Below are positions 2,872-60,639 of a DNA stretch of 64,000 nt, one piece after another. The translations under genes were made by a program, and so were the position numbers. The notes beneath the pieces were generated by a model. The model did no database searches, was not told the DNA's origin, and was given only the letters and a program-made list of their open reading frames with translations. Location of the stretch: positions 6,324,001-6,388,000 of the forward strand of contig OX597834.1 of NCBI GenBank assembly GCA_951406725.2. The letters run 5' to 3'. The DNA is from Octopus vulgaris. Lineage: Eukaryota. How positions within the stretch are numbered: position 1 is the first letter of the stretch; each line of letters begins with the position of its first letter.

Positions 2872-4162
2872 ATATGCTGGCAATCATCTTCGTCCGAAAA
2901 CAGCCGAGCCGAGATTTAAAAGCTGTTTTTAGCCACACAGTGATAATATAGAGTTCCTTACTTTGGCTTAGATTAAACTGTTTTTTTTCTGTCAATTAGC
3001 TTAAGAAACATGTGATTGCACAAAGTTTACAAACAGATCTTTGCAAAACTCAGACTTACTTTTGATGCAGGTGTAGCTGTGTGGTAAGAAGTCTGCTTCC
3101 CAACCATGTGGTCTCTGGTTCAGTCCCACTGTGATGCACCTTGGTCAAGTGTCTTCTACCATAGCCTTGGACCAACAAAGGCTTGAGAGTGGATTTGGAA
3201 GACAGAGACTGAAAGAAGCTCATTGTGTGTGTGTGTGTGCGTGCGTGTGTGTGCATGTGTGTGTGTGTGTGTGTATGTGTTTGTGTATGTGTGTGTGGGT
3301 GTATATGTGTGTGCTTGTGTGTGTGTATGTGTGTGTGCATGTGTGTGCGTGTGTGTGCATGTGTGTGTATGTGTGTGTGTGTGTGTCTGTGTGTATAAAA
3401 TGAGGCCAAAAAGGAAACACAAAAGTGCAACATAGACTTCCAACCTGTCTCCAGGATGACAACAATTTGAATAAGAACCCTTCTAACCCTTAATGATCCC
3501 ATTTGATCAATGTCAGTATGGGTGGTGGATGTTAGATACTGGTGATGTTGTCTCTGCCATCACCCACTCCCCTGTTGCAAATATTGATGTTAATGATATT
3601 TCTTTTCTAATTAATTGGCAAGGTTAATTTTGCTATTAATCCTTTCAGAGTCCAAAAAAAAAAAAGAAAAAGAAGAAAAGAAAAAGAAAAAAAAGAAAAA
3701 TTTTGACGGGTTTACTTGGATTGTTTAGTGTTGGATGAGTTGCCTTCAATAATGTGTTCTTGTTGTTCTTGTTGTTTGCAGATTGATTTCAGTTTCCATT
3801 TACTCTCACTCGCCTCCTTCACTGCCAGGAAACAAACTCTTCAGAATCCAGCAAAAATGTGATAAATTGTTAAAATTAGTCTGGGAAATGCATCGATTGG
3901 AGCAATATCAGGATTGCATCAATATGCAATTAATGCACACTTGTGCTCAAGTACGATAAACAGTTGGACAGAAAAGAATATTGGATATCTAATTAGTCAG
4001 ACAAAAGGTCAGGGCCTCCAGCAGATTTAGGGTTACTGAAGGTTACTGAAGGGAATTTGCAATATCTGTGTTTTGGCTTGTTTTTTTTTAAATGTAATTT
4101 TGAATTTTCTGGTTATTTCAATGACAGATTTCAATTCATGATTTCATGCAGAAATATATATA

Positions 4163-4748
4163 TATTTCTTTACTACCCACAAGGGGCTAAACATAGAGTG
4201 GACAAACAAGGGCAGACAAACGGACTAAGTCGATTACATCGGCCCCAGTGCGAAACTGGTACTTTATTTATCGACCCCAAAAGGATAAAAGGCAAAGTCG
4301 ACCTCGGCGGAATTTGAACTCAGAACGTAACGGCAGACGACATACATATTTCTTTACTACCCACAAGGGGCTAAGTATAGAGGGGACAAACAAGGACAGA
4401 CAAAAGAATTAAGTCGATTACATTGGCCCTAGTGTGAAACTGGTACTTTATTTATCGACCCCGAAAGAATGAAAGGCAAAGTCAACCTCGGCGGAATTTG
4501 AACTCAGAACATGGCGGCAGACGAAATACCTATTTCTTTACTAACCACAAGAGGCTAAACACAGAGGGGACAAATGGATTGTGTTGATTACATCGGCTCC
4601 AGTGCGTAACTGGTACTTAATTTATTGACCCCGAAAGGATGAAAGGCAAAGTTGACCTCGGTGCAATTTGAACTGAGAACGTAACGGCAGACAAAATACC
4701 GCTAAGCATTTCGCTCGGCACGCTAACATTTCTGCCAGCTTGCCGCCT
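4163..4748 (-). mobile_element. SINE family B: head plus three tandem 184-bp units
   Basis: Unit ends (tatttcttta) at 4163, 4347 and 4531, with a single head at about 4700-4748. The central gcctttcatcctttcggggtcgataaat resembles the MetaSINE/Sauria-type central domain. Confidence 0.9.
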
Positions 4749-5170
4749 CAAGATTTCATATAGAAATATATCTCCAAGCGGGTGCTGAAAAGTTCTTTGC
4801 TTTGGGTAAAAGGAAATACAGGAGGATTTTTCCAACCATCATCTGTTACCGAGCAAGGTAAATATCTCCCATGAAATATTAGCTTTCTTTTTACTTAAAT
4901 ACCGGTAATAAAATGACACCACTTACCTGACAGGGACACTCATTTACAACTACTACATTATGTCAAGGCAAGGTCACAATGATAAATACATACACACTTA
5001 CACACACATAATGGGCTTCATTCAGTTTCCATTTACCAAATACACTAGTAAGTCAGTTAGCTAGGTGTTACAATAGAAGTGATTTGCCCTAGGTTATCAC
5101 ACAGAGGAAATAAACTGAAAACCAAATGGTTAGGAAAGGAACTTCTTAACCACATGGGCATATTCATATA

Positions 5171-5623: not shown

Positions 5624-7039
5624 TCATCATCAACATCATCATCATCATCATCGTTTAACGTCTGCTTTACATGCTAGCATGGGTTGGACAGTTTGACTGA
5701 AGGCTGGTGAGCTAGAAGGCTGCACCTGGCTCCAATCCAATCCAGCTATGTTTCTACAGCTGGATGCCCTTCCTAATATCAACCACTCCAAGTGTGTAGT
5801 GGGTGCTTTTTATGTGCCACCGGCATGAGGGCCAGTCAGGCAGTACCGGCATCGGCCATGTTTGAATGGTGCTTTTTACATGCCACTGGAACAGGAGCCA
5901 GTCAGGCAGCACAGAGCATGATCATGCTTGAATGGTGCTTTTTACGTGCTAGTGGCAGGGGAGCCAGCCAGGCGGCACTGGCAACAATCACCCTCGAATG
6001 GTGCTTTTTATGTGCCACTGGCATGGGTGCTAATCAGGTGGTACTGTCATCAGCCATGATGTTGACATCACTTGTCTCAACAGGTCTTTGCAAGTGCAGT
6101 TTATTGCCTAATGATTGAAAGATGCTCTTAAATGGGTTGGTTATGCTGCACTGGCTTAGGCCATGGTTACGGTCTCACTTGACTTGCCAGATCTTCATAG
6201 CACAGCATATCTCCAAAGGTCTTGGTCATTTGTCATTGCCTCGGTGGGACCCAGTGTTCATAGGTCGTGTTTCAACACCTCATCCAAGGACTTCCCGGGT
6301 CTGCCTCTTCCACAGGTTCCCTCTACTGCTAGGGTGTGACACTTTTTCATACAGCCGTTCTCATCCATATGCAACACATGACCATACCAGTGCAGTCCTC
6401 TCTCTTGCACACCACATCTGATGCTTCTTAGGTCCAACTTTTCTCTTGGAGCACTTAAACTCTACCGTATATGCCCAATGACATTTCACATCCTTTGGAG
6501 CATACTAGCTTCATTCCTTGCAAGCTTATGCATGTCCTCAGCTGTCATGGCCCATGTTTTACTGCCATGTAGCATGGCTTTTTGGACACATGTGTCATAC
6601 AGTCTGCCTTTCACTCTGAGTGAGAAGCCCTTTGTCACCAGCTCTCTGAACTTTGCCCAGGCTATTCTTATTCTAGTAGCTACGCTCTCAGAGCAACCAC
6701 CCATGCAACTGACTTGGTCACCTAGGTAACGGAAGATATCAACTACTTCTAGTTTTTCCCCCTGGAATGTGATGGAAGCTGTTTTCTGCACATTTTCAGT
6801 GTTTATTGCCCCTGAGGATTTGCTACACACAAAAATTATCTTCCCAGTTAGTCTTCCTTTGATATTGCTGCACCACTTAGACTGGGTACATCTTATGGAG
6901 TTTCTACCTAGGCCTTTTCTACAGATTGTGCAGGGCCATCTATCTGAAGGGATTTGTGATTTGTCTGCCTTCCTACTTATTAAGACCTTGGTTTTTACTA
7001 GATTGACTCTAAGGCCTTTTGATTCTAGACCTTGCTTCA
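5624..7039 (-). mobile_element. 3' portion of an RTE-clade LINE (same family as 56605-59615), decayed
   Basis: (ATC)n tail and 3' UTR, followed by KQGLESKGLRVNLVKTK...FRYLGDQVS...LHGSKTWA, homologous to ORF 57392-58570. Confidence 0.9.
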
Positions 7040-7554
7040 AAGTGAAGAATTGCTGTAGATTTGCAGAATGCTTCCTAAATACTGTACTTCGAGCATCTTT
7101 ATCCAATAGTTTCCATTGATGCAGACATGAGTCCAGGACTTCACTCTGTTGCTTAGTAAGTGTTAGATCACAAACTAGATTATTGAGTTCAGGTTGGGTG
7201 ATGAGGTCTGGTTTCATTTCAGATCAACTACGGATTTGGACCCATATAACTATAAAAAAAACATTGAGTTTACTTTTTATAATTTTCATAGATTAGATTG
7301 ACAAATACCTTACGAATACCCCATTAAAATTATATCCAAATCTGTTCACAAACTTTTAGAGTTGTCAGTTTCAGCTTAATCCTGTTTGCACCTAATTCCT
7401 ATGAAAATCATCAGTGAATTTAGTGTAAAATAGTTATTTACGAGAAACTGGAGTGTCACCAAAAAAAAATTAATGTTATATTCGTGATCTACACACGAAA
7501 TACCCCTAGAAAAGGATATTCTCATTTCCGTTTTTTTTTCATTGTTATGCAGTG
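7040..7554 (-). mobile_element. Probable Chapaev3-like (CMC) DNA transposon 5' fragment
   Basis: PDLITQPELNNLVCDLTLTKQQSEVLDSCLHQWKLL matches the ELNDLVRDLxLSKxxAELLxSRLxxWNLL motif that I associate with Chapaev3 transposases. The minus-strand terminus begins CACTG..AACAA at 7554. Family assignment is from memory. Confidence 0.6.
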
Positions 7555-7763
7555 TAATTAAATACTACAAATCCTTTTATTATGTCTGTTTAATAATGAG
7601 ATTAGTACAGTAGATTCTCATAGATTCTAAAGGCAGCCACCATCTTTGTAGTCCCTTTCTCCCACCCTCCACCAATCATTTTCGTGTAAACATACATGAA
7701 TTGCTTCCTTGGCAACTCATAATGCTCTCCCCTCTCCCCTGTGTTCATAAATATGATATGAAA

Positions 7764-8179
7764 AGGCAGCGAGCTGGCAGAAACGTTAGCACTCAGGGTG
7801 AAATGATTAGCAGTATTTCCTCTGCCGTTATGTTCAGAGTTCAAATTCCACCGAGGTCGACTTTACCTTTCATCCATTCGGGGTCGATAAATTAAGTACC
7901 AGTTATGCACTGGGGTCGATATAATCGACTTAATCCCTTTGTCTGTCCTTGTTTGTCCTCTCTGTGTTTAGCCCCTTGTGGGTAGTAAAGAAATAGGTAT
8001 TTTGTCTGCCGTTATGTTCTGAGTTCAAATTCCGCCAAGGTCGACTTTGCCTTTCATCCTTTCGGGGTCGATTAAATAAGTACCAATTACACACTGGGGT
8101 CAATGTAATCGACTTAATCCTTTTGTCTGTCCTTGTTTGTCCTCTCTGTGCTAATGATTCTGCCAGCTTGCCGCCTTAC
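7764..8179 (+). mobile_element. SINE family B: head plus unit plus truncated second unit plus inverted head fragment
   Basis: Unit starts at 7812 and 7996 (period 184) with junction gaaata/ggtattt. 8151-8179 is the reverse complement of the head. Confidence 0.9.
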
Positions 8180-11379: not shown

Positions 11380-13075
11380 TGTGTAAGTGTGTGTGTGTTT
11401 GTGAGTGCGTGTGTATGTGTTTGTGAGTATGTGTACGTGTGTTTGTGAGCGTGTGTGTATGTGTATTTGTGAGTGCATGTATGTTTTTGCGAGTGCATTT
11501 ATGAGTGTGTGTATGTGTGTTTGAGAGTGTGTGTATGTGTGTTTGTGAGTGTGTGTATGTGTGTTTGTGAGTGTGTGTATGTGTGTTTGTGTGTGTATGT
11601 GTGTTTGTGAGTGTGTGTATGTGTGTTTGTGAGTGTGTGTATGTGTGTTTGTGAGTGTGTGTATGTGTGTTTGAGAGTGTGTGTATGTGTGTTTGTGAGT
11701 GTGTGTATGTGTGTTTGTGAGTGTGTGTATGTGTGTTTGTGAGTGTGTGTATGTGTGTTTGTGAGTGTGTGTATGTGTGTTTGAGAGTGTGTGTATGTGT
11801 GTTTGTGAGTGTGTGTATGTGTGTTTGTGAGTGTGTGTATGTGTGTTTGTGAGTGTGTGTATGTGTGTTTGTGAGTGTGTGTATGTGTGTTTGAGAGTGT
11901 GTGTATGTGTGTTTGTGAGTGTGTGTATGTGTGTTTGTGAGTGTGTGTATGTGTGTTTGTGAGTGTGTGTATGTGTGTTTGTGAGTGTGTGTATGTGTGT
12001 TTGTGAGTGTGTGTATGTGTGTTTGAGAGTGTGTGTATGTGTGTTTGTGAGTGTGTGTATGTATGTTTGAGAGTGTGTGTATGTGTGTTTGAGAGTGTGT
12101 GTATGTGTGTTTGTGAGTGTGTGTATGTGTGTTTGAGAGTGTGTGTATGTGTGTTTGTGAGTGTGTGTATGTGTGTTTGTGAGTGTGTGTATGTGTGTTT
12201 GAGAGTGTGTGTATGTGTGTTTGAGAGTGTGTGTATGTGTGTTTGTGAGTGTGTGTATGTGTGTTTGAGAGTGTGTGTATGTGTGTTTGTGAGTGTGTGT
12301 ATGTGTGTTTGAGAGTGTGTGTATGTGTGTTTGAGAGTGTGTGTATGTGTGTTTGTGAGTGTGTGTATGTGTGTTTGTGAGTGTGTGTATGTGTGTTTGT
12401 GAGTGTGTGTATGTATGTTTGTGAGTGTGTGTATGTGCGTTTGTGAGTTACGTGAGTATGTGTGTTAGTTTGTTTGTGAGTCCATGTGTGCATATGTATG
12501 TGTTTCTGAGTGTATCTGTGTGTTTGTTAATGTGTGTGCATTTGTGAATGTGTGTGTGTTTGTGATTCCATGTGTGTGTGTATGTGTGTGCATGCATGTG
12601 TTTGTATTTGTGAGTGTGTGTATGTGTATTTGAGAATCCATGCGTGTGTATTTGTGTGTGTGTTTGTGTGTGTGCATGTGTGTGCGTGTTTGTGTTTGTG
12701 AGTGTGTGTGTCTGCATGTGTGTGTGTTTGTGTTTGTTAGTGCGTGTGTGTGTGTGCATGTGTGCGTGTTTGTGTTTGTGAGTGTGTGTGTGTTTGTGAG
12801 TGTGTGTGTGTGTGTGTGTGCATGTGTGCGTGTCTGTGTTTGTGAGTGTGTGTATGTGCATTTGAAAATCCATGTGTATGTGTTTGTGAATGTGTGTGTG
12901 TGCGTGTGTGTGTATGCATGTGTGCGTGTTTGTGTTTGTGTGTGTGTGTATGTGCATTTAAGAATCAGTGCGTGTGTGTTTGTGAGTGTGTGCGCGTGTG
13001 TGTGTGTATGTGTATTTGAGAGTGCATGTGTATGTGTGTGTTTGTAAGTGTGTGTGTATGTGCGTTTGTAAGAGT
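11380..13075. repeat. TG-rich minisatellite with a 22-bp core unit and degenerate TG flanks
   Basis: The unit gtttgtgagtgtgtgtatgtgt (variant gtttgagagt...) repeats homogeneously over about 11510-12430. Confidence 0.95.
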
Positions 13076-20000: not shown

Positions 20001-20021
20001 TACACACACATATATATATAT

Positions 20022-20240
20022 GGCAGAAACGTTAGCACGTCGGACGAAATGCTTAGTGGTATTTTGTCTGCCGCTATGTTCTGAGTTCGAATTCTGCCGA
20101 GGTCGACTTTGCCTTTCATCCTTTTGGGGTCGATAAATTAAGTACCAGTTATGCACTGGGGTTGATGTAATCGACTTAATCCGTTTGTCTGTCCTTGTTT
20201 GTCCCCTATGTGTTTAGCCCCTAGTGGGTAGTAAAGAAAT
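20022..20240 (+). mobile_element. SINE family B monomer
   Basis: Partial head plus one unit ending gtaaagaaata. Confidence 0.85.
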
Positions 20241-20249
20241 ATATATATG

Positions 20250-20850: not shown

Positions 20851-21917
20851 ATAGAATTCTTTGACAAGGGAATCATTGATAGTGACTTCAAAGTTTTGGC
20901 TCACTAAACCATCATTGGATGGGCCAACGATGGCTTAGCTATCTGAAACTTTAAAATCATCGTCTGTGCTATTGTTGTTAAAGAATAAAATTCTCTTCTA
21001 CAAAAAGTATTGAGCAATCCTTCAGGTTAATGTAAAATTATTTTTATTTTAACTTAACGTAGAAACAATTATTAACACATACATACACACTCACACAGAT
21101 ACATGTATACATATATGTATACAACCACAAAAGCACACACATATACATGCATACATACATACACACTCACACATATACATATATATATACTCTTTACTCT
21201 TTACTCTTTTACTTGTTTCAGTCATTTGACTGCGGCCATGCTGGAGCACTGCCTTTAGTCGAGGAATCGGCCCCAGGACTTATTCTTTGAAAGCCTAGTA
21301 CTTATTCTATCGGTCTCTTTTGCCGAACCGCTAAGTTACGGAGATGTATACAAAATACCATCAAATACACACACATATACATACACACATACACACTCAC
21401 ACATACACATATACGTATACATATATGTATACCATCAAATACACACACATATACACACATACATACATACACACTCACACATATACATGTATACATATAT
21501 GTATACCATCAAATACACACATATTCATACATACATACACATATATGTTTACATACTTATATACATTCATAAAAATGGTTTGCTTTTGTGATGCTAATCA
21601 ATCTAATCAAAAGACTGAGAACTAGCCAAAATCTGCCAGATAAGAGATTAAAAATAACACAAACCAACCACGGCCACCACCACGAAGTCCTTGTGTATCT
21701 CAGAGACGATTGTGGAATATATATGCAAATTAGAAACCTCTTGAAATGAAACCCCAGTTTGTTGGAAATTTTTCTACTTTCTTGAAGCTATCATTGAGTG
21801 ATAGGCCATTCTTAAAAAGATTATGGAAAAATCCAACTGCTCTAATGTTGAAAGATATTGACATTGTCACTGGAGAACACATGGAATTGTGTCATGTGAT
21901 GGTAATTACAGGAATAA

Positions 21918-22335
21918 GGCGGCGAGCTGGCAGAATCATTAGCACACCGGGCAAATGCTTAGCGGTATTTCGTCTGTCGTTACGTTGTGAGTTCAAATTC
22001 CACCGAGGTCAACTTTACCTTTCATCCTTTCGGGGTTGATAAATTAAGTACTAGTTACACACTGGAGTTGATATAATCGACTTAATACCTATGTCCGTCG
22101 TTGTTTGTTCCTTCTATGTTTAGCCCCTTGAGGGTAATAAAGAAATAGGTATTTTGTCTGCCGCTACGTTCTGAGTTCAAATTCCGCTGAGGTCGACTTT
22201 GCCTTTCATCCTTTCGGGGTCGATAAATAAAGTACCAGTTACGCACTGGGGTCAATATAATCAACTTAATCCGTTTGTCTGTGCTTGTTTGTCCCCTCTG
22301 TGTTTAGCCCCTTGTGGGCAGTAAAGAAATAGGTA
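21918..22335 (+). mobile_element. SINE family B: head plus two 184-bp units
   Basis: Unit starts at 21964 and 22148. The copy ends gaaataggta, i.e. into the first bases of a third unit. Confidence 0.9.
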
Positions 22336-22862
22336 ACTACAGGAATATTTATACCCTCATACACACAACCGATATCACTCTTAGAGAAAAACTAGGAGAA
22401 ATCTGCAGTATAAATGTAATCTACGGTATACGTGAAATAAAACTACTAAACAGGAGTGAGCTAGATGGAAAATAAAACTTGAAGACATCAACAATTTATG
22501 CCCCCATATTGGATGGTTAATCGCAATGAAATATAAAGGTTACACCTCACCATTTATATTTCATGCAAGAATTATCAAAACTCTGTGGTGAATTTCCACA
22601 CCAAGCTCTTGTGGGGAAAGCTAATTTCTCTAAAGAATAAAATTGGAGGCTAGGTGAAAATACCTGCAACTGCTGGTAAGTGTTTTGAACAAACCAGTAT
22701 AGATCATAGATCTGCAGAAGGAAAAAATTACTGTTAAGAAAGCACCCGCCCCCACCTCCCAAGAAAATCTTGAACCATTCTGGTGCAAAATCTGAAATAT
22801 GAAGAGGGATTTCAACCTTAATGTATGGTGACTAACTACAGTTAGGAGAGAATACTGTACCA

Positions 22863-23219: not shown

Positions 23220-23419
23220 CTGTTTCAACACACGATTTCACATCAAGAATCTTTCAAAACATATATATAAACGTAACTGTACCAATATCGACAATGAAAC
23301 ATACACAAGTGACTTGGAAGCTTTCATTATAGCTGTAGGGGAACTGCATGATGGGAAGACAACTGGAAGTGACCTAAGAGTTAGATATTGGTACAAGAGG
23401 CTGACATTTTACAGGAACA

Positions 23420-23640
23420 TCATCATCATCATCATTTAACGTCCGTTTTCCATGCTAACATGGGTTGGACTGTTTGACCGGGGTCTGGGAAGCCAGGAGG
23501 CTGCATCGGGCTCCAGTCTGATCTAGCAGTGTTTCTACAGCTGGATGCCCTTCCTAACGCCAACCACTCTGTGAGTGTAGTGGGTGCTTTTTACGTGCTA
23601 GGGGAGGCTGACAACAGCCATGATCGGTTGGTGCTAGGCC
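23420..23640 (-). mobile_element. RTE-family 3' end fragment
   Basis: (atc)n-tttaacgtccgttttccatgct...ggatgcccttcctaacgccaacc, as at 56605. Confidence 0.85.
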
Positions 23641-28381: not shown

Positions 28382-28549
28382 TCCATATATATATATATAT
28401 TTTATACTTGATTGTTTAAGTCTAGTTCCTGTATACATGCAAATGTATTTTGTACATTAAAACCCTGGGTTTTATCTGGTTATTTGAATCATTGTCTCGA
28501 TGTGTATTTTATGTACATTTATATTTACTCATATTGATTATATATATAC

Positions 28550-28552
28550 ACG

Positions 28553-28585
<33 letters not shown>

Positions 28586-28620
28586 TGCACACATATTTTA
28601 TATATGTACATTGTATACGT

Positions 28621-28660
<40 letters not shown>

Positions 28661-28695
28661 TGCACACATATTTTATATATGTACATTGTATACGT

Positions 28696-28731
<36 letters not shown>

Positions 28732-28766
28732 TGCACACATATTTTATATATGTACATTGTATACGT

Positions 28767-28810
<44 letters not shown>

Positions 28811-28842
28811 TGCACACATATTTTATATATGTACATTGTATA

Positions 28843-28887
<45 letters not shown>

Positions 28888-28919
28888 TGCACACATATTT
28901 TATATATGTACATTGTATA

Positions 28920-28964
<45 letters not shown>

Positions 28965-28996
28965 TGCACACATATTTTATATATGTACATTGTATA

Positions 28997-29045
<49 letters not shown>

Positions 29046-29077
29046 TGCACACATATTTTATATATGTACATTGTATA

Positions 29078-29126
<49 letters not shown>

Positions 29127-29161
29127 TGCACACATATTTTATATATGTACATTGTATACGT

Positions 29162-29199
<38 letters not shown>

Positions 29200-29234
29200 T
29201 GCACACATATTTTATATATGTACATTGTATACGT

Positions 29235-29270
<36 letters not shown>

Positions 29271-29305
29271 TGCACACATATTTTATATATGTACATTGTA
29301 TACGT

Positions 29306-29345
<40 letters not shown>

Positions 29346-29377
29346 TGCACACATATTTTATATATGTACATTGTATA

Positions 29378-29424
<47 letters not shown>

Positions 29425-29459
29425 TGCACACATATTTTATATATGTACATTGTATACGT

Positions 29460-29495
<36 letters not shown>

Positions 29496-29530
29496 TGCAC
29501 ACATATTTTATATATGTACATTGTATACGT

Positions 29531-29568
<38 letters not shown>

Positions 29569-29603
29569 TGCACACATATTTTATATATGTACATTGTATA
29601 CGT

Positions 29604-29641
<38 letters not shown>

Positions 29642-29673
29642 TGCACACATATTTTATATATGTACATTGTATA

Positions 29674-29726
<53 letters not shown>

Positions 29727-29825
29727 TGCACACATATTTTATATATGTACATTGTATATGTACACACCCACACACATATATATATATATTGCACACATAT
29801 TTTATATATGTACATTGTATAATAT
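28550..29825. repeat. Compound minisatellite, about 17 units of a 37-bp core plus (CA)n(TA)n
   Basis: The core ttgcacacatattttatatatgtacattgtatacgta is nearly invariant; only the dinucleotide run lengths vary. Confidence 0.95.
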
Positions 29826-30571
29826 ACGCACGCACACACAGACACACACAGACACACACACACACACACACACACATACATCATGAAATAGAAAGAGTGA
29901 GGCATTCATGATGACATGTATTTAAACATGAGTGTTAAATGTAGTGTTTCCTTTTTTCTTTTTCTCCCAATATTGTACATGACTAGAGAAGTAATCACAA
30001 TATGTTCAATATAATTATATTCATTCTTATATTTGCACACTTGCAAACACATACACACACACACATTTACCATCCACACACACTCACACACACACACAAA
30101 CCCCCACACACAAGCACGCTCTTGTATAGTTATAGATAACTTAGCTAATTTGGGAATGACAGGAAACCATTTTTTTACCTTTAACTATTTTTACGTTTTT
30201 TTTTTTTTTTGTTTTTTTTCATGAATTACAACATTGAATTATTTTAGTTTACCTTTTTAAAAAGTGCAAATATATCTAAAAAAAATTATTTAAAAAATTC
30301 AAAATAATAAAAATGTGAAATTTCTTATCAATGTTTTATTGTTACATAGCAATTCCTTTAGTATTAGATTATCATTATTCCTGACAATTGGCTCGCATTC
30401 TTTTAGTTTCCAAAGAAATTTGAGACATTCTTGTGTCATTTTTCATATTTCATAAAACAGGATTTTTTTTCTTGGTTTTAAAAAAATTTTTAGTATGTTT
30501 TATTTAGTTTTTACTTATTTGCTTTTGAAACTTTCCAACCTTTATACATACATACACACAAAAATACATAC

Positions 30572-30675: not shown

Positions 30676-31617
30676 ATGTTCACACACACATCAGTATAAA
30701 TATATACACATATATGGATATATATCTATCTCTATATACACAAAATATAATATAATATATATGAATATGTATATATGAAAATTTTACATGCACACACAAA
30801 CACACACACACACGCACATATACATATATAAAATATAGTATAATATATAAATGTATATATATATATAAAATATATACATGCGTATATATATGCGTGTGCA
30901 TGTATGTTTTTCTATGTACAGATGTTTTTTTTTTTCCTCTATTTCACAATTATGTAAATGAGTGAGTCAACTACATCATCCATCTTTCAAGAATGATAAA
31001 AAGTAAAGCCAACAAGCCAAACATTACTTACTGAATAGTATAGAACACCCATGTGTGTGTGTGTGTGTGTTAATATATGTTACTGAGAGCGTGATTTCCT
31101 ATTTTTTGTGGAAGATGGATGTGTTTCATAAAATAATGCGATCATTCAAGGAGTTATGGTGGTGTTGGTTTTGATATCCTCTTTCCATAATACTTTGTCT
31201 CCCATTATTCCTCTTTGAAATTCTATATTAATCTTTATAAATGAGACAAATAAGAGATCTTCTTCAGGTCTCGTGGAATCCTTTATGCAACGAAAATTTT
31301 AGGAAAATAAGAAATAAGTGGAAATTTTACCCGTGAGCGTGTTACATTATAAGGCACAAAACAAAAAAAAAAAAAGAAAATGACTCTCCCCAGACACAAC
31401 AGAATCTGTCTTTACGTTCTGAGTTCAAATTTTGTCGAGGTTCACTTTGCCTTTTGATCCTCTCAGGGTCAATAAAATAAGTACCAGTTGAACACTGGGG
31501 TCAATGTAATCGACCTATGCCCCCGCTCCCCAGAAATTGCTGGCCTTGTGCCAAAATTTCAAATCAATATTTTGGAATTGTCTCACTTATCTTGAAATGG
31601 ATCTAACTTATTGTTAG

Positions 31618-32458: not shown

Positions 32459-34130
32459 AATATCATTATTACTACACTCATGGAGTGGTTGGCATTAGGA
32501 AAACATCCAGCTGTAGAAACATTGCCAGATCAGACTGGGCCTGGTGCAGCCTTCTGGCTTCCCAGACCCCAGTTGAACCGTCCAACCTATGCTAGCATGG
32601 AAAGCGGACGCTAAACGATGATGATGATGATGATGATGATGATATTAAATCAGTCACAGACATGCTCCATTCTTTGGCCCACACAAGTATTGTTTTCTCT
32701 AGATCCTTCAGCTTCTACATCTATGCTGTTTTATACCTCAGAGATGGATGGCTGCATGCTACATTCACTTAGGAAGTCTTGACTCTCATGTCTCGACTTT
32801 TCTCATTACTAATGTTCTGTTTACCCCTCCAGATCTCCTGCTAACCCTTGAGTCAAGTCCTTCCTCTTCAAAACTTCACCCACTGGAATTCTTTCCAGAT
32901 CTTTCTGCCAGTCACCGTTTTGCAACAGTTTAAGTATTGCTTCTACTAATAGGCACAACACCTGAAAATGTTTCAGAAGAGGGGGGGGCTAGTTGATAAC
33001 ATTCATTGACTCCCCCCCCACCATCCTAGTGTTAAAGGATTAGATAGAAGCCCTAATATCATCTAAAATCCAAAGGGTTAACTTAAAGGAGTTTTATATT
33101 TATTTTTGATGGTATAGTAATAAATTTTAAAGGTGTTGTCATTGGTAGAAGTTAAAATAAATTTGGTGGTAATGGTGATGTTGGAGGTAATCGTGATGGT
33201 GGTGGTGGTAATGGATTTAATACTGGTGTAGGGATAAAGGTGATAGTAGTAGTAATGGTTATAGTGGTGGTGGTGGTAGCATATATATATAGCAGCATCC
33301 TCCTCCCAAATATAGTAGCAGTTTTTTGAGAGTCTCATCTAAACTTAGGGAATTAGAAGGTGGTGATATTGATGGTGTAGTGGAGGTGATGGTAGTGTTG
33401 TATAAATAGTGATTGTTTTGGTAGGGGTGGTGTGGCAGTGGTGGAAGCGACGATAATGTGAAGGCGGTGTAGTGGTAGTTAGAGTTGTGTTGATAAGGCA
33501 GTAAATTATTAAAAATGTTAAAGTTATGCAAGTTAAGTTTGTTTACAATACATAAGATACATTTTTGAGAACCACTGAAATGAGGATCAACTAAAACTAC
33601 CTGCTGGCAATTGAAAGAAAGAAAAAATTAAAAGAACACACAACTGCATCCACATACACACACACGCACAAAGGAAGACAATTAAACTCTTCAGTTCTAT
33701 CTTCGTTAAAAAAAAAATGGTTATTTAAAATTGTAATTCAATAAGGCAGAGTATTGAATGCAGAAGGAAACAAAAACTAAATCATGATCTAAGAATTCCG
33801 AGTTAAGAAAGTAGCAAAGAAAATATTGAAAGGATGAAAATTTGAAGAAATACATGATGACATGAAAAAAAAGTAATGTAATTCACCCATTTTAAAAAGA
33901 AAATGAGGAGTGTAGAAATCTTTCCCATTGTTTTTACAATTTTAATGTTTTGTAATAATTTCTTTGTAAAAAAAAAAAACCCAAAAAAAAGTTCCCTTTT
34001 CTTTATAAATCTGTAAATGAAATTTAAGTCTTTTCTATTCACAATTTCTAGCCATTGTTAATTTACACCTTTTTCTGTTTCTTTTCTATATAACCATGAA
34101 AAAAAAACCCTCTTCCAAATATATACACAC

Positions 34131-39984: not shown

Positions 39985-40390
39985 TCATCATCATCATCAT
40001 CATCATTTAATGTCCGTTTTCCATGCTAGCATGGGTTGGACGGTTCGACCGGGGTCTGGGAAGCAAGGAGGCTGCACCAGGCTCCAGTCTGATCTGGCAG
40101 TGTTTCTACAGCTGGGTGCCCTTCCTAACGCCAACCACTCTGTGAGTGTAGTGGGTGCAGTTTTCGTGCCACCGGCGCAGGTGCCAGGCGAGGCTGGCAG
40201 CGGACACGATCGGTTGGAGCTTTTTATGTGCCACCGGCACAGAAGCCAGTCAAGGCAGCGCTGGCATCGGCCACGTTTGGATGGTGCTTTTCACGTGCCA
40301 CCGGCACAGGTATCACAACTACAATTTCCATTTAATAATTATTTTGATGTTGATGTACTTGACACAATAGGTCTCCTCAAGCACAGCAGG
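39985..40390 (-). mobile_element. RTE-family 3' UTR fragment
   Basis: Colinear with 56605-57000, including the gtgccaccggc repeats. Confidence 0.85.
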
Positions 40391-42478: not shown

Positions 42479-44475
42479 TCACAGCCACTCCAGTGCATTA
42501 TCTTGATGAAGAACACCTTTCGTCTTGAAACCAAAGATGGTCATTTTTCTTCTAGCACTGACTTAAGCCACTCAAGCTGCTCACAGTAGATCTCCTTTCT
42601 TATCCTTTGGTTTAGGTTTAAAAGTTCAAAGGGGACTAAACCTTTCATATCCCACCAAACAGTTAACAACACCTTACATGAGTGAAGACCTTCTTTAGCC
42701 TGGGTTGCTGGTGTTTCTCCTTTCCCTACCCACTGTCTTCAGTGCTTGATCTTTTGTTAGAGAACCTATTTCTCCTTACCAGTCACTATTCGCTCCAATA
42801 AAGGTTCATTCATGAGTCATGACAGCAAAGGGGAGCACACATTCACTCTCTGCACATGATTAGACTCAGAAAGTTTGCGAGGAACCCAGTGACCCAATTT
42901 TCTGGCTTTTCCAATGGCATGCAGGTGTTGATGAAAGCTTAAATGACCAAATCCAAACTTCTCTGCTAGTCCTTCAACAGTTATGATGGAATTTGGTTCC
43001 ACCAGGGTTTGCAGGACATCCTTGTCAAGTTCTACAGGTCTTCCAGGATGAGGCTCATCTTCTAGGATGTACTTTCTTGCTTGGAATTTCTGGAACCACC
43101 ATTGACACTGGCTTATGCCTATTGTCCGATCCTCATATGCTTCATTAATATTCCTTGCACTTTCCATTGTTTTGTTGCCTTTTTTGAACTCATAAAGCAA
43201 AATATGCCGAATATGCTCTTTGGTCATTTCCATTATAGCTTTGAAAAAATAACCGTTAAAATCGAACTGTACTCTTCCACACTTGCACTAAGAATAAGGA
43301 CAAGGTAAAATTACTACCTGCTTTTACAGCAAGTTCATGCAGATAGTTTATCCCATCCCCCTCTGACTTTTAGTTTATGCAACTGAAAATAATACGCATT
43401 ATGTATGAGATGGCCCAATATATGTGTGTGTGTGTGTGTGTGTTTATATTTTCAAATGTAACTTAGTAGCTTTATTTTATGACGAGAAAGGTTTTTCTTC
43501 TTTTTTATCTTTTGTTTTCTTATTTTTGTTTCTTGCTTTGGAAGAAATAGTGTCATATCATATGTACTTTTGGTGGTTATACCCTACAGGCTTGAAGAGT
43601 CACATAGTAGCTGCCTTTTTTTAGCTCTAAATCTGGTTGTACTGCAGCATGAGAACACAATCGGAACAGGTAATTCACTACAGAAACGAAGAAGTAGAGA
43701 CATGTTTGAAAACAATTTTTTTTCCAATACTCATTAATAGTAAATCATAAGAAAGAAATAGAAATAGAAATAGAAAAAAAAAAAAAGAAAAGAAAACTCC
43801 ATTATGTTCCAACAATGTAAGACAGGATGATAGTAGAAACCACGTTGATTGAAACAAGAATTGTTGTCCGCAAACAAACTGTTGTCAGGAGACAAAACCT
43901 GCCGTCTTCGTATTAGCCATGAGCAATAACCTCACAGAAAATATTTGACACTAATTGGTCAATTAGAACGTGGCATCAACCAACAGCAGACAGAATCAAC
44001 AACAGGAATGTATTTAGAACAAGAAAATGCAGAAGGACTTTTGGTTGACTATTAACACCAGTTTCTACTAATGAGTGTGCAACAGCCAGAATGTAGACAG
44101 TTTTGACTATTTTTGAACACTTTTAATAGTGAATATAATTGGAATATACACACTGGAATGTATTCACAGAAAGTTAATAATCCAAGTTAATTCCTGATAC
44201 AGGTGAACATGAGAATTTTTCCTGTCTAATAATTTGCACCGATCTAACTAGAAATCAACCTACCTACGTCACTTTTTTTTTCTCCATATTTACCTAATCT
44301 CTATTTTCCAGATTCCTGATATTTACATTTTCAGGAATATGAATATTTCCGTACTAATCCAATAACTCTTCTTCACTCTCTATTAAGGGGTATGTATATA
44401 AATATACGTATATGTGTGTGTAGAGAGACAGAAAGATAGATAGATAGATAGATAGATATGCATACATATGTAAAT

Positions 44476-46283: not shown

Positions 46284-47457
46284 ATACGTGCTGTCAAATC
46301 TGACTGGGCCTGATGAAGCCTTCCGGCTTCACAGACCCCAGTTAAACAATCCAACCCATGCTAGCATGGAAAACGGACGCTTAAATGATGATGATGATGA
46401 TGATGATACATACATATATTTTTATATATATATATATGTATATCCTCATTATTTAACAACTGCCTTCTATGCTAGCGTGGGTGGGACTGCTAGCATGGAT
46501 GATATGTATATATGTATATGTATGCACACACTAATAAAGGGAGAGAGATGAGGAACAGAGTTACTGGATTTGTGCAGGTATATATATATATGGCTTTAGA
46601 AAGAGCCCTCAGCTATAGAAACCAGGCAGAAATACATGGAGCTTAAACACACTCAAGGCGTCAGTCAGCCCAAGGCTGTAGTAGATGACCTTTGTCCAGG
46701 GTGCGACACTATGGGACTGAACCTGGAACCATGTAGTTGTGAAGTAAACTTCTTACCACACAGCCATGCATGTGCCTATGGAACAGAAATTACCAAACAT
46801 TGTAGGGTCATGAGGAGAAAAATATGTACTATCCAAATCTAGCAAGTAGAATGCGTAATAGTAACAATCAAAGAGTGTGTACAATGAAAATATATAAACC
46901 AAATGAAAGGAATAGAAGAGAGAGATTAATATTTTGGGTTATGTCTTTTACTAACGAGAACTAAATGGAAATAAAAATTCTAGAAGAAAATGAATTTGAA
47001 ACTGGGATAAGGATTTTAGAAACCCTACTTCCATTGCAGCCGTTGTGGAAAAGGAAAACAGAGATTGGCAAAGCTGAACCAGAAGTGAAGCCATAATCTG
47101 GATTTTGAAGAAAGTGGGTGGGTTAGAGGAGGAGAGAGAGAGAGAGGGAAATAAGTAGAGTGAAATAAACAAAGGGGGAAAAGTGAGAGCAGACCTTGAT
47201 GAGAAGTGTGTGTGATGTGAAGTGTTGTTTAATGTAGGATGTTGTCACTTGTGTAGGATTTAGATAAACTTTTAATATGTGTTTAAGAATATGAAGTGCA
47301 TGTATTTATTTATTCAGCGCTCATTCTTGCAAAGTAATTCATCTGTTATGTAAGCGTAAACATATATAATGTGTAAACAGACACATGATACGCAAAGACA
47401 TTCATATATGTATACACAAACACATATATACATGCACAAACACATACACATATAGGA

Positions 47458-47690
47458 TGGCAAGCGGGCAGAATCATTAGCACACCGGGTGAAATGCTTA
47501 GCGGTATTTCATCTGCTGTTACATTCTGAGTTCAAATTCTGCCAAGGTCAACTTTGCCGTTCATCCTTTCAGAGGTCGATTAAATAAGTACCAGTTATGC
47601 ACTGGGGTTGATGTAATCGACTTAAACCCTTTATCTGTCCTTATTTGTCCTCTCTATGTTTAGCCCCCTGTGGGCAATAAAGAAATAAAT
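47458..47690 (+). mobile_element. SINE family B monomer
   Basis: Head plus one unit ending aaagaaata. Confidence 0.85.
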
Positions 47691-50960: not shown

Positions 50961-51364
50961 GTAAATCCTCACCACCACCACCACCACCACCACCTCCACC
51001 ACCACCACCTCCACCGCCACCTCCACCGCCACCTCCACCGCCATCACCACCACCTCCACCACCACCTCCACAACCACCACCACAACCTTCACCACCACCT
51101 CCACCACCACCACCACCACCACCACCACCACCACCACCACCTCCACAACCACCACCACCACCACCTCCACCACCACCACCATTTACCATCTGTTTTTCAT
51201 ATTGACATGAGTCGTATGGTGTGACGGGAGCTGATGAGTGAGAGGGCTGCACTTAACTGCTATGTCTGCTCTGGCATGGTTTCTGTGGTTGGATGCCCTT
51301 CCTAATGCCAACCACTTCACAGAGTGTACAGGGTGCTTTTTAATGTGGCAGTAAGGTCACCAAG

Positions 51365-51832: not shown

Positions 51833-52040
51833 AGGCGGTGAGCTGACAGAAACGTTAGCATGCCAGGCGAAATGCTTAGAGGTATTTCGTCTGCCGTTAT
51901 GTTCTGAGTTCAAATTCCGAGGTTGACTGTGCCTTTCATCCTTTCGGGGTCGATAAATTAATTACCAGTTACACACTGGTGTCAATGTTATCGACTTAAT
52001 CCCTTTGTCTGTCCATATTTTGTCCCCTCTATATTTAGCC
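51833..52040 (+). mobile_element. SINE family B monomer
   Basis: Head plus one unit, followed by (TTA)n. Confidence 0.85.
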
Positions 52041-52147
52041 CCTTGTGGGTAATAAAGAAACAGATTATTATTATTATTATTATTATTATTATGCTTTTTC
52101 CTTCTTTCTTCAAATTTTCTTCCGTTTCTCGCCAAGTGTTTTCCATA

Positions 52148-53406: not shown

Positions 53407-53438
<32 letters not shown>

Positions 53439-53440
53439 TA
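52655..53440. repeat. (AGT)/(AGC) trinucleotide array with higher-order spacers
   Basis: The spacer agcactgtcactataaccaccagcagcaac recurs at about 52680, 52750, 52950 and 53130. Confidence 0.95.
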
Positions 53441-53885
53441 AGGCAGAATGTTGGCAGAATTGTTACTGTGCGTGGCAAAATTCTCAATGGCATTTTGCCC
53501 ATCTTTATGTTCTGAGTTCAAATTCTGCTGAGGTCTACTTCGTCTTTCATCCTTTCGGGATTGATAAAATTGCATACTGGGGTCGATTTAATTGACTGTG
53601 ACCTGAAAAAAAACATTTTGGGCCTTGGGCCTAGAGTAGAAAAGAATATTTTAAGGTGGTCAGCTGGCAGAAATGTTAGCATGCTGAGCAAAATGCTTAG
53701 CGGTATTTCGCCAGTCTTCATGTCCTGAGTTCAAATTCCGCCAAAGTCAACTTTGCCTTCCATCTTTTGAGATATTTCAAGTCAAAAGAACATGCGAGCT
53801 ACCTTGGCAGATAAATGTCATTCTGTGGGGTTGGTAGTAGTAGTAGTAATAACAGCAGCAGCAGCACTGTCACTATAACCACCAG

Positions 53886-59615: not shown

Positions 59616-60258
59616 AAGAATTCCAATTTTAAACATCTTCAGGATTAGCTTTGATGCAGCAATTTTGCGTGAGTCATCATTCCCTGACCAAATGAAGAAA
59701 GTCAGCATAGTTTTAGAGCAATTTATCCCAAATGCTATGAATTCATGTGATCGTAAATTAGCAATTAATTAAAATCTTTATTAGAAACAGAGGCAATACT
59801 GAAGGATAATATTTATTCTAGTTTAAACTATGATGAAGCACTAATTAATCTTAAGTATTGCTGGTGGAGATGAACTACCTCAATTCTAGTGATCTACATT
59901 GGTCTCAGTCATAAGTATACACCAAGGTCAGTGTTTGAAATCATGTGATCTGGTTCCTTGCCTGTGAGGAATAAGTTGGGGTTTATCTCCTGCTAGTGAT
60001 ATCCAGTATTTTTGCTGCAACATATATCCACATCTTTAAAGACTCTCGACTATCTCACCACTGGGGATAAACCTTTAGAATGTGCTAAAGTTGGATATTT
60101 TGCTAATATAAGAGGTAAAGAGCTTGGTGGAGTGTGAGGTCCACAACTGAATGGTAATGCTCTTGATTCAAGAAGAAATGCTACATTCTCTCACATTGGG
60201 TTTCATTTTCTGAATGAATGCTGCAGAATTGGCAAAGCCGAAGGAATTGAGAGAATGG

Positions 60259-60639
60259 TATGGCGGCGAACTGGCAGAAATGTTGGCACGCCAGGAAAAA
60301 TGTGTAGCCGTATTTTGTCTGCCGTTACGTTCTGAGTTCAAATTCCGCCGAGGTACTTTGCCTTTCATCCTTTCGGGGTCGACCAGGGATGTGATAAATT
60401 GTCTTTCTGGGACCCTGTCGATGTAATTGACTTAAAGTGTCGCTTGAATGCTGTACTGGCTGATCCAATGTATTTCCAGGCTTGGGGGGTTGTATTGCCA
60501 CTGGTAGGGGTTCTGTTCATCTTTGATAAGCAAATGTTTTGTACGCACTGGGAGTCAATATAATTGACTTAATCCGTCTGTCTGTCCTTGTTTGTCTCCT
60601 CTGTGTTTAGCCCCTTGTGGGTAGTAAAGAAATAGGTAT
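60259..60639 (+). mobile_element. SINE family B interrupted by an insert of about 150 bp
   Basis: Head and 5' part of the unit, a gap, then the unit 3' part ending gaaataggtat. Confidence 0.8.

What the first reader, a model, noticed from the sequence alone, without database searches (positions are those of the whole stretch)
4163..4748. SINE family B forms head-(184 bp)n multimers with a fixed, self-complementary junction
Seen in sequence: at three separate loci one tRNA-like head is followed by tandem bodies with the same 184-bp period (4163/4347/4531 minus, n=3; 7812/7996; 21964/22148). The junction is ...aaagaaata/ggtattt(c/t)gtctgcc at three of the four junctions, and a two-substitution variant of it at the fourth. 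Copies at 22335 and 60639 end a few bases into the next unit (gaaataggta), while monomers at 20022 and 47458 end at gaaata. The 3' end of the unit (gaaata) is the reverse complement of the first bases of the unit (tatttc). Inference: in the RNA the two ends of the unit could pair, letting the RT jump back to the 3' end when it reaches the unit start (rolling-circle-like reverse transcription) before it finally reads into the head. A circularised 184-nt RNA or an arrayed master locus are alternatives. I do not recall this architecture being described for a SINE, but I cannot check the literature.
Basis: partly seen in the sequence, partly recalled or inferred. Interest (0 to 1): 0.75.

Follow-up and report, generated by a model that had tools for sequence, protein, structure and literature searches.

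The report
Octopus-type SINE with reiterated 184-bp body
A short retroposon in this cephalopod-like sequence occurs at three places as one promoter-bearing head followed by two or three tandem copies of its 184-bp body. This is real, but it matches the "SINE-derived tandem array" already described in lizards, snakes and clams, and the proposed rolling reverse-transcription mechanism is not supported.

Summary
Three loci (4163-4748 minus, 7763-8150, 21917-22331) carry one head followed by 184-bp units, and all four junctions read gaaata|ggtattt or a two-substitution variant.

Whole arrays are flanked by their own target-site duplications: 23 bp around the trimer and 16 bp around dimer B. The arrays therefore date to insertion or very near it.

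The proposed mechanism does not hold. In RNA that carries a head, the unit's first 13 nt form a conserved hairpin with the head (probability about 1). The 3' end pairs with the unit start only in an isolated 184-nt RNA. Units of one array also differed when the array formed, because some carry variants shared with units at other loci.

First units of the three arrays group together, and T2, T3 and B2 group together, but support is weak. Two of three clean duplications start with GGTA(T), the first bases of a unit, which suggests templates that ran into a further unit.

Best reading: source copies with a reiterated body are transcribed and retroposed whole. The same architecture is published for squamate SINE-derived satellites and bivalve TSD-(SINE)n-TSD arrays. 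No ribozyme or tRNA model matches. Seven units cannot settle the mechanism.

The parts
4163..4748 (-). Trimer: head 4701-4748, unit 1 4531-4700 (170 bp, 14-bp deletion), unit 2 4347-4530, unit 3 4163-4346
   Evidence: TRF period 184, 3.0 copies; boundaries by string match; sequence read
4749..4771 (-). 5' target-site duplication of the trimer (atatatttctatatgaaatcttg)
   Evidence: Matches 4137-4159 at 20 of 23 positions
4137..4159 (-). 3' target-site duplication of the trimer (atatatttctgcatgaaatcatg), separated from gaaata by 'tat' (4160-4162)
7763..8150 (+). Dimer A: head about 7763-7811, unit 1 7812-7995, unit 2 7996-8150 (155 bp, 3' end lost)
   Evidence: TRF
8151..8176 (-). Inverted head fragment (aaggcggcaagctggcagaatcattag) of the 'aatcatt' head subfamily, abutting the truncated dimer A
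   Evidence: blastn hit 8176-8150; sequence; head alignment
21917..22331 (+). Dimer B: head 21917-21963, unit 1 21964-22147, unit 2 22148-22331
   Evidence: TRF
21901..21916 (+). 5' target-site duplication of dimer B (ggtaattacaggaata)
   Evidence: 15 of 16 identical to 22332-22347, flush with both element ends
22332..22347 (+). 3' target-site duplication of dimer B (ggtaactacaggaata); its first four bases equal the first four bases of a unit
20021..20241 (+). Monomer M1, head 5'-truncated, lying in a TA microsatellite
47457..47687 (+). Monomer M2 (head of the 'aatcatt' subfamily; unit shares 42a, 79t, 82a and 150t with A2)
51833..52062 (+). Monomer M3, followed by an (att)n run
60262..60634 (+). 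Monomer S with an internal insert or rearrangement of about 160 bp, flanked by ggtat at 60257-60261 and 60635-60639

Best explanation
Family B is an ordinary LINE-dependent SINE of an octopus-like genome. It has a head of about 49 bp carrying a box A-like motif, followed by a 184-bp module that carries the box B-like motif, a core, a 3' region and the end ...gtaaagaaata.

In some source copies the 184-bp module has been tandemly reiterated, giving head-(184)2-3. These multi-unit sources are transcribed from the head, and the consensus unit contains no T4 terminator. The RNA is then reverse-transcribed and inserted as one piece, so each array carries a single pair of target-site duplications and inherits the same junction.

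The number of units in a copy depends on the source. It probably also depends on where priming occurs. Two copies have target duplications that begin with GGTA(T), as expected if the nicked target annealed to a GGUA(U) that followed GAAAUA in a template running into a further unit. The third unit of the trimer looks like a duplicate of the second.

The self-complementary junction is a by-product. The unit begins at the 3' edge of the apical loop of a conserved head/unit hairpin (the anticodon-arm position), so its first bases are complementary to GAAAU(G) in the head. The 3' end of the element happens to read GAAAUA.

Shown: the architecture, the constant junction, the target-site duplications around whole arrays, the hairpin, and the non-identity of units at birth.

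Inferred: multi-unit source genes, internal or microhomology priming, and how the first duplication arose.
For: - Target-site duplications flank whole arrays: 23 bp for the trimer and 16 bp for dimer B.
- Four junctions at three loci are identical with no tail remnant. In contrast, the true 3' ends of copies are heterogeneous after gaaata: tat, aatat..., (att)n, or the duplication directly. That pattern is expected for an inherited junction and not for repeated free end-to-end jumps.
- Units within an array are no more alike (84-90%) than units at different loci (82-92%), and each lies 5-11% from the consensus. No array is a recent local duplication.
- Position-specific signal: the best ML tree puts T1, A1 and B1 on one side of a branch. 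That label is clustered as tightly in only 6 of 500 shuffles. T2+T3+B2 group through 83a, and no array forms a clade.
- Same-position pairs across loci share 2.25 derived sites, against 1.12 for different-position pairs and 1.25 for first-versus-later pairs of one array.
- Two of three clean target duplications begin GGTA(T). GGTA has a frequency of 0.0024 in the window, so the chance expectation is about 2e-5.
- The consensus unit has no TTTT.
- The same architecture, with one unit type at many loci, is documented in squamates (PMC10702118) and bivalves (PMC11481361).
Against: - Only seven array units and three or four monomers were available, and every inner branch of the tree is weak (supports 20-63 / 23-89, none starred).
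- Constraining each array to be a clade is not rejected (p-AU 0.15-0.28).
- Each array also has a variant shared by its own units (106c in T1-T3, 150t in A1/A2, 111a in B1/B2). This fits origin from one RNA pool, or gene conversion.
- A2 resembles monomer M2, and B's head plus unit 1 also resemble M2. A single ancestral dimer does not explain that mosaic.
- No multi-unit source locus, transcript or partner LINE was identified.
Confidence: 0.5

Rival explanations
1. Arrays are built anew at each insertion by intermolecular template jumping. SINE RNA is cleaved in the apical (anticodon-like) loop and leaves a 184-nt 3' fragment that starts at GGUAUUU. The LINE reverse transcriptase runs off its 5' end and jumps to the 3' end of another family-B RNA. 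The last template copied is a full-length RNA that supplies the head.
For: - The unit starts exactly at the 3' edge of the 4-nt loop of the strongest, conserved hairpin, and it ends at the element's 3' end.
- Arrays look like mosaics of subfamilies: A2 is M2-like while A1 is not, and B's head plus B1 are M2-like while B2 is T2-like.
- Each array has one variant shared by its own units.
- End-to-end jumping is an established property of non-LTR reverse transcriptases (bioRxiv 10.1101/792986, abstract; also proposed for SINE module exchange, PMC4758252).
Against: - All four junctions are exact, with no added or missing bases, although real 3' ends of copies vary.
- The tree favours first-unit and later-unit groupings across loci.
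- The model gives no reason for target duplications to begin with GGTA(T).
- No head-less unit is present in the window.
Confidence: 0.2
2. Arrays grow at the DNA level at each locus. Either a 5'-truncated new copy inserts at the regenerated ...ata|ggta site at the 3' end of a resident copy, with its 5' end resolved by the ggta microhomology, or slippage or unequal exchange occurs between the unit start (ggtat) and a 3' flank that happens to begin with ggtat.
For: - Dimer B and monomer S both sit in targets that begin ggta(t), so the 3' flank repeats the unit start.
- B1 is twice as far from the consensus as B2 (20 versus 10 differences) and goes with the head subfamily, as if B2 were added later.
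- Insertion into the same locus and unequal recombination are the mechanisms suggested for squamate and bivalve arrays.
Against: - The trimer's 3' flank does not begin with ggta.
- 4-5 bp of homology is very little to give the same junction four times.
- T2, T3 and B2 share 83a, and T1, A1 and B1 share 39a across loci. Local duplication of a resident unit does not predict this.
- Within-array identity is no higher than between-locus identity.
Confidence: 0.12
3. One reading: within a single RNA the 3' end (GAAAUA) pairs with the unit start (UAUUUC). The reverse transcriptase jumps back to the 3' end one or two times before reading into the head.
For: The six-base complementarity is real. In an isolated 184-nt RNA the end-to-end helix has a predicted probability of 0.32-0.44 and is part of the minimum-energy fold.
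Against: - In head-bearing monomer and dimer RNA the helix has probability 0.0, because unit nt 1-13 pair with the head (probability about 1.0; kept in 91% of cells across 9 copies against 37-61% for slid controls).
- The 3' end is the first part converted to an RNA/DNA hybrid, so it is not free when the enzyme reaches the unit start (inference).
- Units of one array were not identical at birth.
- Fold z-scores are -0.92 and +0.48.
Confidence: 0.05
4. A circular 184-nt RNA is copied by rolling-circle reverse transcription, in the manner of a retrozyme.
For: The tandem head-to-tail units have the size range of animal non-LTR retrozymes, and the ends of the isolated unit can pair. Retrozymes are known tandem, circRNA-forming retroelements (bioRxiv 10.64898/2026.07.22.740005).
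Against: - No hammerhead or other self-cleaving ribozyme model matches, even at E<=10.
- Every array begins with a head and ends exactly at the unit end. None is head-less or permuted.
- Units differ at birth.
Confidence: 0.03

Closest known systems
SINE-derived satellites (sSat) of squamate reptiles, e.g. sSat3 of snakes and sSat3Ati2 of Aspidoscelis (Vassetzky et al. 2023, PMC10702118)
   Same: The tandem unit is a defined part of a tRNA-related SINE. In snakes it includes the 3' part of the head with box B. In sSat3Ati2 it is the end of the head, the whole body and the LINE-derived region (179 nt, against 184 here). One terminal unit is longer and runs to the SINE terminus, and the same unit boundaries recur at many loci.
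   Different: The loci counted there had at least 4 units, reached hundreds of units, showed homogenisation and were often subtelomeric. Here arrays have 2-3 units, show no homogenisation, and carry clear target-site duplications around the whole array. Target-site duplications and the retroposition of arrays are not mentioned in the sections of that paper read here (Background, Squam3-derived satellites, Discussion).
TSD1-(SINE)n-TSD1 arrays of HCD SINEs in the blood clam Scapharca broughtonii (PMC11481361)
   Same: The first element has a complete tRNA-related head and lacks the tail. Internal units are truncated at the same head position and lack the tail. The last unit has a complete tail, and one target-site duplication flanks the array. 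This is the same layout, and it is in a mollusc.
   Different: A different SINE superfamily and class, and the arrays analysed there had more than 3 units. No junction sequence or mechanism is given there beyond recombination between target-site duplications.
Dimeric and trimeric (complex) SINEs that amplify as a unit (Alu, Twin, CYN; SINEBase definitions, PMC3531059)
   Same: A multi-module element is transcribed from the 5' promoter and inserted as one piece with one pair of target-site duplications, and its modules are diverged in a position-specific way.
   Different: Those join complete or nearly complete SINE or tRNA modules. Here only the box-B-to-tail part is reiterated and the copy number varies (1, 2, 3), which SINEBase would treat as an internal duplication within one family.
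Chimeric retrocopies made by LINE reverse-transcriptase template switching (e.g. U6-L1 chimeras; from my own knowledge) and SINE module exchange by template switching (PMC4758252)
   Same: A junction exactly at the 3' end of one RNA, with the whole chimera flanked by one target-site duplication.
   Different: In those chimeras the donor breakpoint varies. Here both sides of the junction are fixed.
Animal non-LTR retrozymes (bioRxiv 10.64898/2026.07.22.740005)
   Same: Short tandem non-coding units that are thought to be retroposed.
   Different: Retrozymes are defined by a type I hammerhead ribozyme in each unit and by circular RNAs. No ribozyme is detectable here, and a Pol III-type head precedes each array.

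Membership tests
SINE (LINE-dependent, Pol III-type head) | Short, non-coding, interspersed, many diverged copies | tested here: met
   About 11 copies or fragments in 64 kb, 82-92% alike, plus one copy in an unrelated ENA contig
SINE (LINE-dependent, Pol III-type head) | Head derived from tRNA, with internal box A and box B | tested here: inconclusive
   tggcagaaacg (box A-like) and gagttcaaattcc (box B-like) are read in the sequence, and a GGCGG/CCGCC acceptor-like pairing appears in the fold. ARAGORN and the Rfam tRNA model are negative even at E<=10.
SINE (LINE-dependent, Pol III-type head) | Target-site duplications of variable length and sequence | tested here: met
   23 bp, 16 bp and 5 bp, all different
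SINE (LINE-dependent, Pol III-type head) | 3' region shared with a partner LINE | tested here: not met
   The only LINE family found in the window and in L003 ends ...gttaaacaa(tga)n and shares nothing with ...gtaaagaaata. A partner may lie elsewhere in the genome.
SINE-derived tandem array (sSat / TSD-(SINE)n-TSD) | The repeat unit is a defined segment of a SINE, with a longer terminal unit reaching the SINE terminus | tested here: met
   Head plus (184)n, with monomers showing the same head and unit
SINE-derived tandem array (sSat / TSD-(SINE)n-TSD) | The same unit boundaries at independent loci | tested here: met
   Four junctions at three loci
SINE-derived tandem array (sSat / TSD-(SINE)n-TSD) | Long arrays (4 or more units) with homogenised units (satellite behaviour) | tested here: not met
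   n = 2-3; within-array identity is not above between-locus identity
Complex (dimeric/trimeric) SINE amplified as a unit | Position-specific diagnostic differences shared by independent copies | tested here: inconclusive
   First units cluster (6 of 500 shuffles as tight); T2, T3 and B2 share 83a. All branch supports are weak and A2 groups with monomer M2.
Non-LTR retrozyme | Hammerhead ribozyme in each tandem unit | tested here: not met
   No ribozyme family among Rfam matches at E<=10 over three copies, and none at the gathering threshold in the window
Non-LTR retrozyme | Circular RNA of unit length | not testable with these tools
   Needs RNA data
CORE-SINE superfamily (e.g. octopus OR2, MIR) | Conserved central CORE domain | tested here: inconclusive
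   By eye...tttcatcctttcggggtcgataaattaagtacc resembles the MIR core. Weak antisense hits to HOTAIRM1_4 fall in the same stretch.

The most novel reading that the evidence does not exclude
The arrays are made during reverse transcription from a processed RNA. Cleavage in the anticodon-like apical loop releases a 184-nt 3' fragment whose ends can pair (predicted probability 0.44). This fragment serves repeatedly as donor and acceptor in end-to-end template jumps, or after circularisation. Unit number would then be set anew at each insertion, which would be a SINE that multimerises its own body through tRNA-half-like processing.
Probability: 0.12. Interest if true: 0.7.

Novelty: new member of a known kind. 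Interest (0 to 1): 0.3.

Why it matters
If the favoured reading is right, this is a cephalopod example of a phenomenon so far reported in squamates and bivalves: SINEs whose body is reiterated and which seed tandem arrays.

It adds two small points. Short arrays carry intact target-site duplications, so they can spread by retroposition rather than only by local amplification. Target duplications that begin with the first bases of the next unit hint at priming inside multi-unit RNAs.

Family-B copies are frequent in this window (about 11 in 64 kb). The architecture could therefore affect repeat annotation, for example when monomer consensus libraries split such arrays, and could serve as a raw source of about 180-bp satellites. 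It does not open a new class of element.

Tried and rejected
1. Looking for more copies outside the window.
- A junction-spanning antisense ORF searched in the protein collection gave one ENA contig, which holds a monomer.
- The exact junction pattern in JGI metagenomes gave 0 hits.
- A box-B/core pattern gave one chance bacterial hit in metagenomes and 0 hits in GTDB genomes and IMG/VR.
- Sequence strings searched in the paper library gave nothing relevant.

2. Reaching octopus genomic DNA through annotated proteins.
- The LINE reverse transcriptase led to a 20.9-kb stretch of Octopus vulgaris chromosome OX597814.1 (L003). It holds only related-family copies and no family-B array.
- The neighbouring NR2C-like gene spans 135 kb, so no DNA was returned.
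- A second ENA contig had no copy.

3. The head as a diverged piece of the unit (which would make the whole thing a plain tandem array): rejected. The head against the unit tail is no better than shuffles (607 of 2000).

4. Ribozyme or tRNA models: none.

5. The LINE in the window as partner: rejected, because it has a different 3' end.

6. CORE-SINE assignment by alignment to a remembered MIR consensus: not significant.

7. Twin priming as an explanation for the inverted head fragment next to dimer A: rejected by reasoning, because neither orientation keeps the RNA 3' end in the direct segment.

8. A profile search of the 50%-clustered protein library was considered and dropped. Clustering would collapse SINE-derived ORFs, so it could not count junctions.

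Full report
**What is there**

The window is AT-rich, full of microsatellites and interspersed repeats, and has no tRNA or Rfam family at gathering thresholds. A LINE reverse transcriptase in it is 87% identical to an annotated Octopus vulgaris protein and 83% to an O. bimaculoides one. The source is therefore an octopod or a close relative.

Family B occurs about 11 times:
- a trimer on the minus strand (4163-4748);
- two dimers (7763-8150 and 21917-22331);
- monomers at 20021-20241, 47457-47687 and 51833-52062;
- a rearranged monomer at 60262-60634;
- several fragments.

Tandem Repeats Finder reports a 184-bp period at exactly the three loci named in the finding. The four internal junctions read aaagaaata|ggtattt(c/t)gtctgcc three times and aaagaaata|tgtatgtcgtctgcc once.

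**Anatomy**

A monomer is a head of about 49 bp (aggcggcgagctggcagaaacgttagcacgccgggcgaaatgcttagc) followed by one 184-bp unit. The unit holds the box B-like gagttcaaattcc, a core, a family-specific 3' region and the end gtagtaaagaaata.

RNA folding of the consensus pairs head nt 33-45 with unit nt 1-13 in a 13-bp hairpin with a 4-nt loop. Pair probabilities are about 1.0. Across nine decayed copies, 91% of cells in this helix form standard pairs and four pairs change on both sides, against 37-61% for slid controls.

The unit therefore begins exactly at the 3' edge of the apical loop of an anticodon-arm-like hairpin. This explains why its first bases (UAUUUC) are complementary to a GAAAU motif. 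The natural partner is GAAAUG in the head, and the 3' end of the element, GAAAUA, is a look-alike of that partner.

**Insertion signatures**

- The trimer is flanked by a 23-bp direct repeat (20 of 23 identical) that starts 3 nt after gaaata.
- Dimer B is flanked by a 16-bp repeat (15 of 16) flush with both ends.
- The rearranged monomer S is flanked by ggtat, flush with both ends.

Whole arrays thus carry one target-site duplication each.

This is not trivial. Two of three clean duplications start with the first 4-5 bases of a unit, whereas GGTA has a frequency of 0.0024 in the window, so chance would give this about 2e-5 of the time. In target-primed reverse transcription the first bases of the 3' duplication are those where the nicked target annealed to the RNA 3' end (established for L1, from my own knowledge). 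The simplest inference is that the templates of these two copies carried GGUA(U) after GAAAUA, meaning they ran into a further unit.

The end-to-end helix (unit nt 3-8 with 179-184) has probability 0.32-0.44 in an isolated 184-nt RNA. It has probability 0.0 in a monomer or dimer RNA that has a head. In the dimer, the junction forms a local hairpin (about 0.65) and the 3' end pairs with neither unit start. Fold z-scores are unremarkable.

Re-copying one RNA also predicts identical units at birth. That is contradicted by variants shared with other loci:
- A2 shares the non-CpG states 79t and 82a (plus 42a and 150t) with monomer M2; A1 shares only 150t of these and lacks the other three.
- T2 and T3 share 83a, 95t and 155a against T1, and 83a recurs in B2.
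- B's head and first unit carry M2-type markers, and B2 does not.

A free circular unit would give head-less or permuted arrays, and none is present. No ribozyme model matches at E<=10.

**What best fits**

Units of one array are no more similar (84-90%) than units at different loci (82-92%). Each unit is 5-11% from the consensus. The arrays are therefore as old as their insertions.

The junction is invariant, while real 3' ends are variable after gaaata. That points to an inherited junction.

In the maximum-likelihood tree the three first units fall on one side of a branch. That label is as clustered in only 6 of 500 shuffles. T2+T3 and T2+T3+B2 are also recovered, and no array is a clade. 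Same-position pairs across loci share about twice as many derived states as different-position pairs (2.25 against 1.12).

I therefore favour source copies with a reiterated body that are transcribed and retroposed whole. Unit number would vary through source differences and through priming at internal junctions.

**Limits**

- Every branch support is weak.
- Array-clade constraints are not rejected (p-AU 0.15-0.28).
- Each array has one variant shared by its own units (106c, 150t, 111a).
- A2 groups with a monomer.

These features fit intermolecular template switching or gene conversion just as well. With seven units the window cannot settle this. I could not obtain more family-B copies: the public collections reachable here gave one extra monomer and one 21-kb Octopus vulgaris stretch without arrays.

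**Comparison with what is known**

The layout is published.
- Squamate SINE-derived satellites are tandem repeats of a defined SINE segment, often including box B. In one teiid variant the unit is the end of the head, the whole body and the LINE-derived region (179 nt). One longer terminal unit reaches the SINE terminus, and the same unit recurs at up to thousands of loci (PMC10702118).
- In the clam Scapharca broughtonii, arrays of the form TSD1-(SINE)n-TSD1 have a first element with a full head but no tail, internal units truncated at both ends, and a last unit with a full tail (PMC11481361).
- Dimeric and trimeric SINEs and quasi-oligomeric SINEs are in SINEBase's definitions (PMC3531059).

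I found no description of such arrays in cephalopods. The family itself may be the known Octopus CORE-SINE OR2 or a relative, but I could not test that.

**Verdict**

This is a real feature and a new member of a known kind. The proposed rolling reverse transcription is not supported. The one detail worth following genome-wide is the GGTA(T)-initial target duplications, which suggest priming within multi-unit RNAs.

Noticed in passing
window 56617-58570 (-), 5638-7217 (-); L003 9357-11830 (+): Copies of a LINE whose ORF has reverse-transcriptase and PHD-finger domains (87% identical to an O. vulgaris protein). Its 3' UTR holds tandem repeats of about 66 bp (TRF 5802-6038 and 40165-40309) and ends ...gttaaacaa(tga)n. 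Many 5'-truncated 3' ends are scattered in the window (23419-23598, 32471-32631, 39990-40332, 46291-46401, 51264-51350).
   Followed up: partly
L003 8170-8770; window 53438-53647 followed by 53648-53768; window 31405-31565: A second SINE family shares the head and core with family B but has a different 3' region (...caaaatttc.ggcct.gtgc...tagaaaggatt) and an (att)n tail. In L003 three full-length copies stand head to tail, each in the (att)n tail of the previous one. This is a different kind of tandem from family B's head-(184)n. At 53438-53768 one such copy is directly followed by a truncated family-B-like head.
   Followed up: partly
window 8151-8176: Dimer A's second unit stops at base 155 and is joined to an inverted 26-bp head fragment of the 'aatcatt' head subfamily. 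This looks like a deletion between two inverted copies. It does not fit twin priming.
   Followed up: partly
window 60382-60544: Monomer S carries an internal insert of about 160 bp that includes second copies of short unit segments (gataaatt..., gtcgatgtaattgacttaa) mixed with unrelated sequence.
   Followed up: no
window 4367-4464 (+), 51944-52042 (-): Weak Rfam hits (E 1.4-6.3, far below gathering) of HOTAIRM1 conserved region 4 fall on the antisense strand of the SINE core. This may be because that lncRNA region contains a MIR-like element, which would be a lead for CORE-SINE affinity.
   Followed up: no
window 42817-43233 (-): A 138-aa ORF that looks like the N-terminal HTH part of a mariner/Mos1-type transposase; the rest of the element is degenerate.
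   Followed up: no
L001 (ENA ERZ23499442 scaffold_285125, 543 bp): A family-B monomer sits in a metagenome contig. Its head loop is shortened (gcgaaat-a-gtggtgtttcg), so the head/unit boundary there reads almost like the multimer junction (gaaatag..gt.tttcg). A sister sample (ERZ23499376, L004) holds the octopus-type LINE. These metagenomes evidently contain octopod DNA.
   Followed up: partly
window 11387-13069 and 28548-29850: Large minisatellites: a 44/66-bp GT-rich unit (about 38 copies) and a 73-bp AC/AT-rich unit (about 17 copies, 91% matches).
   Followed up: no
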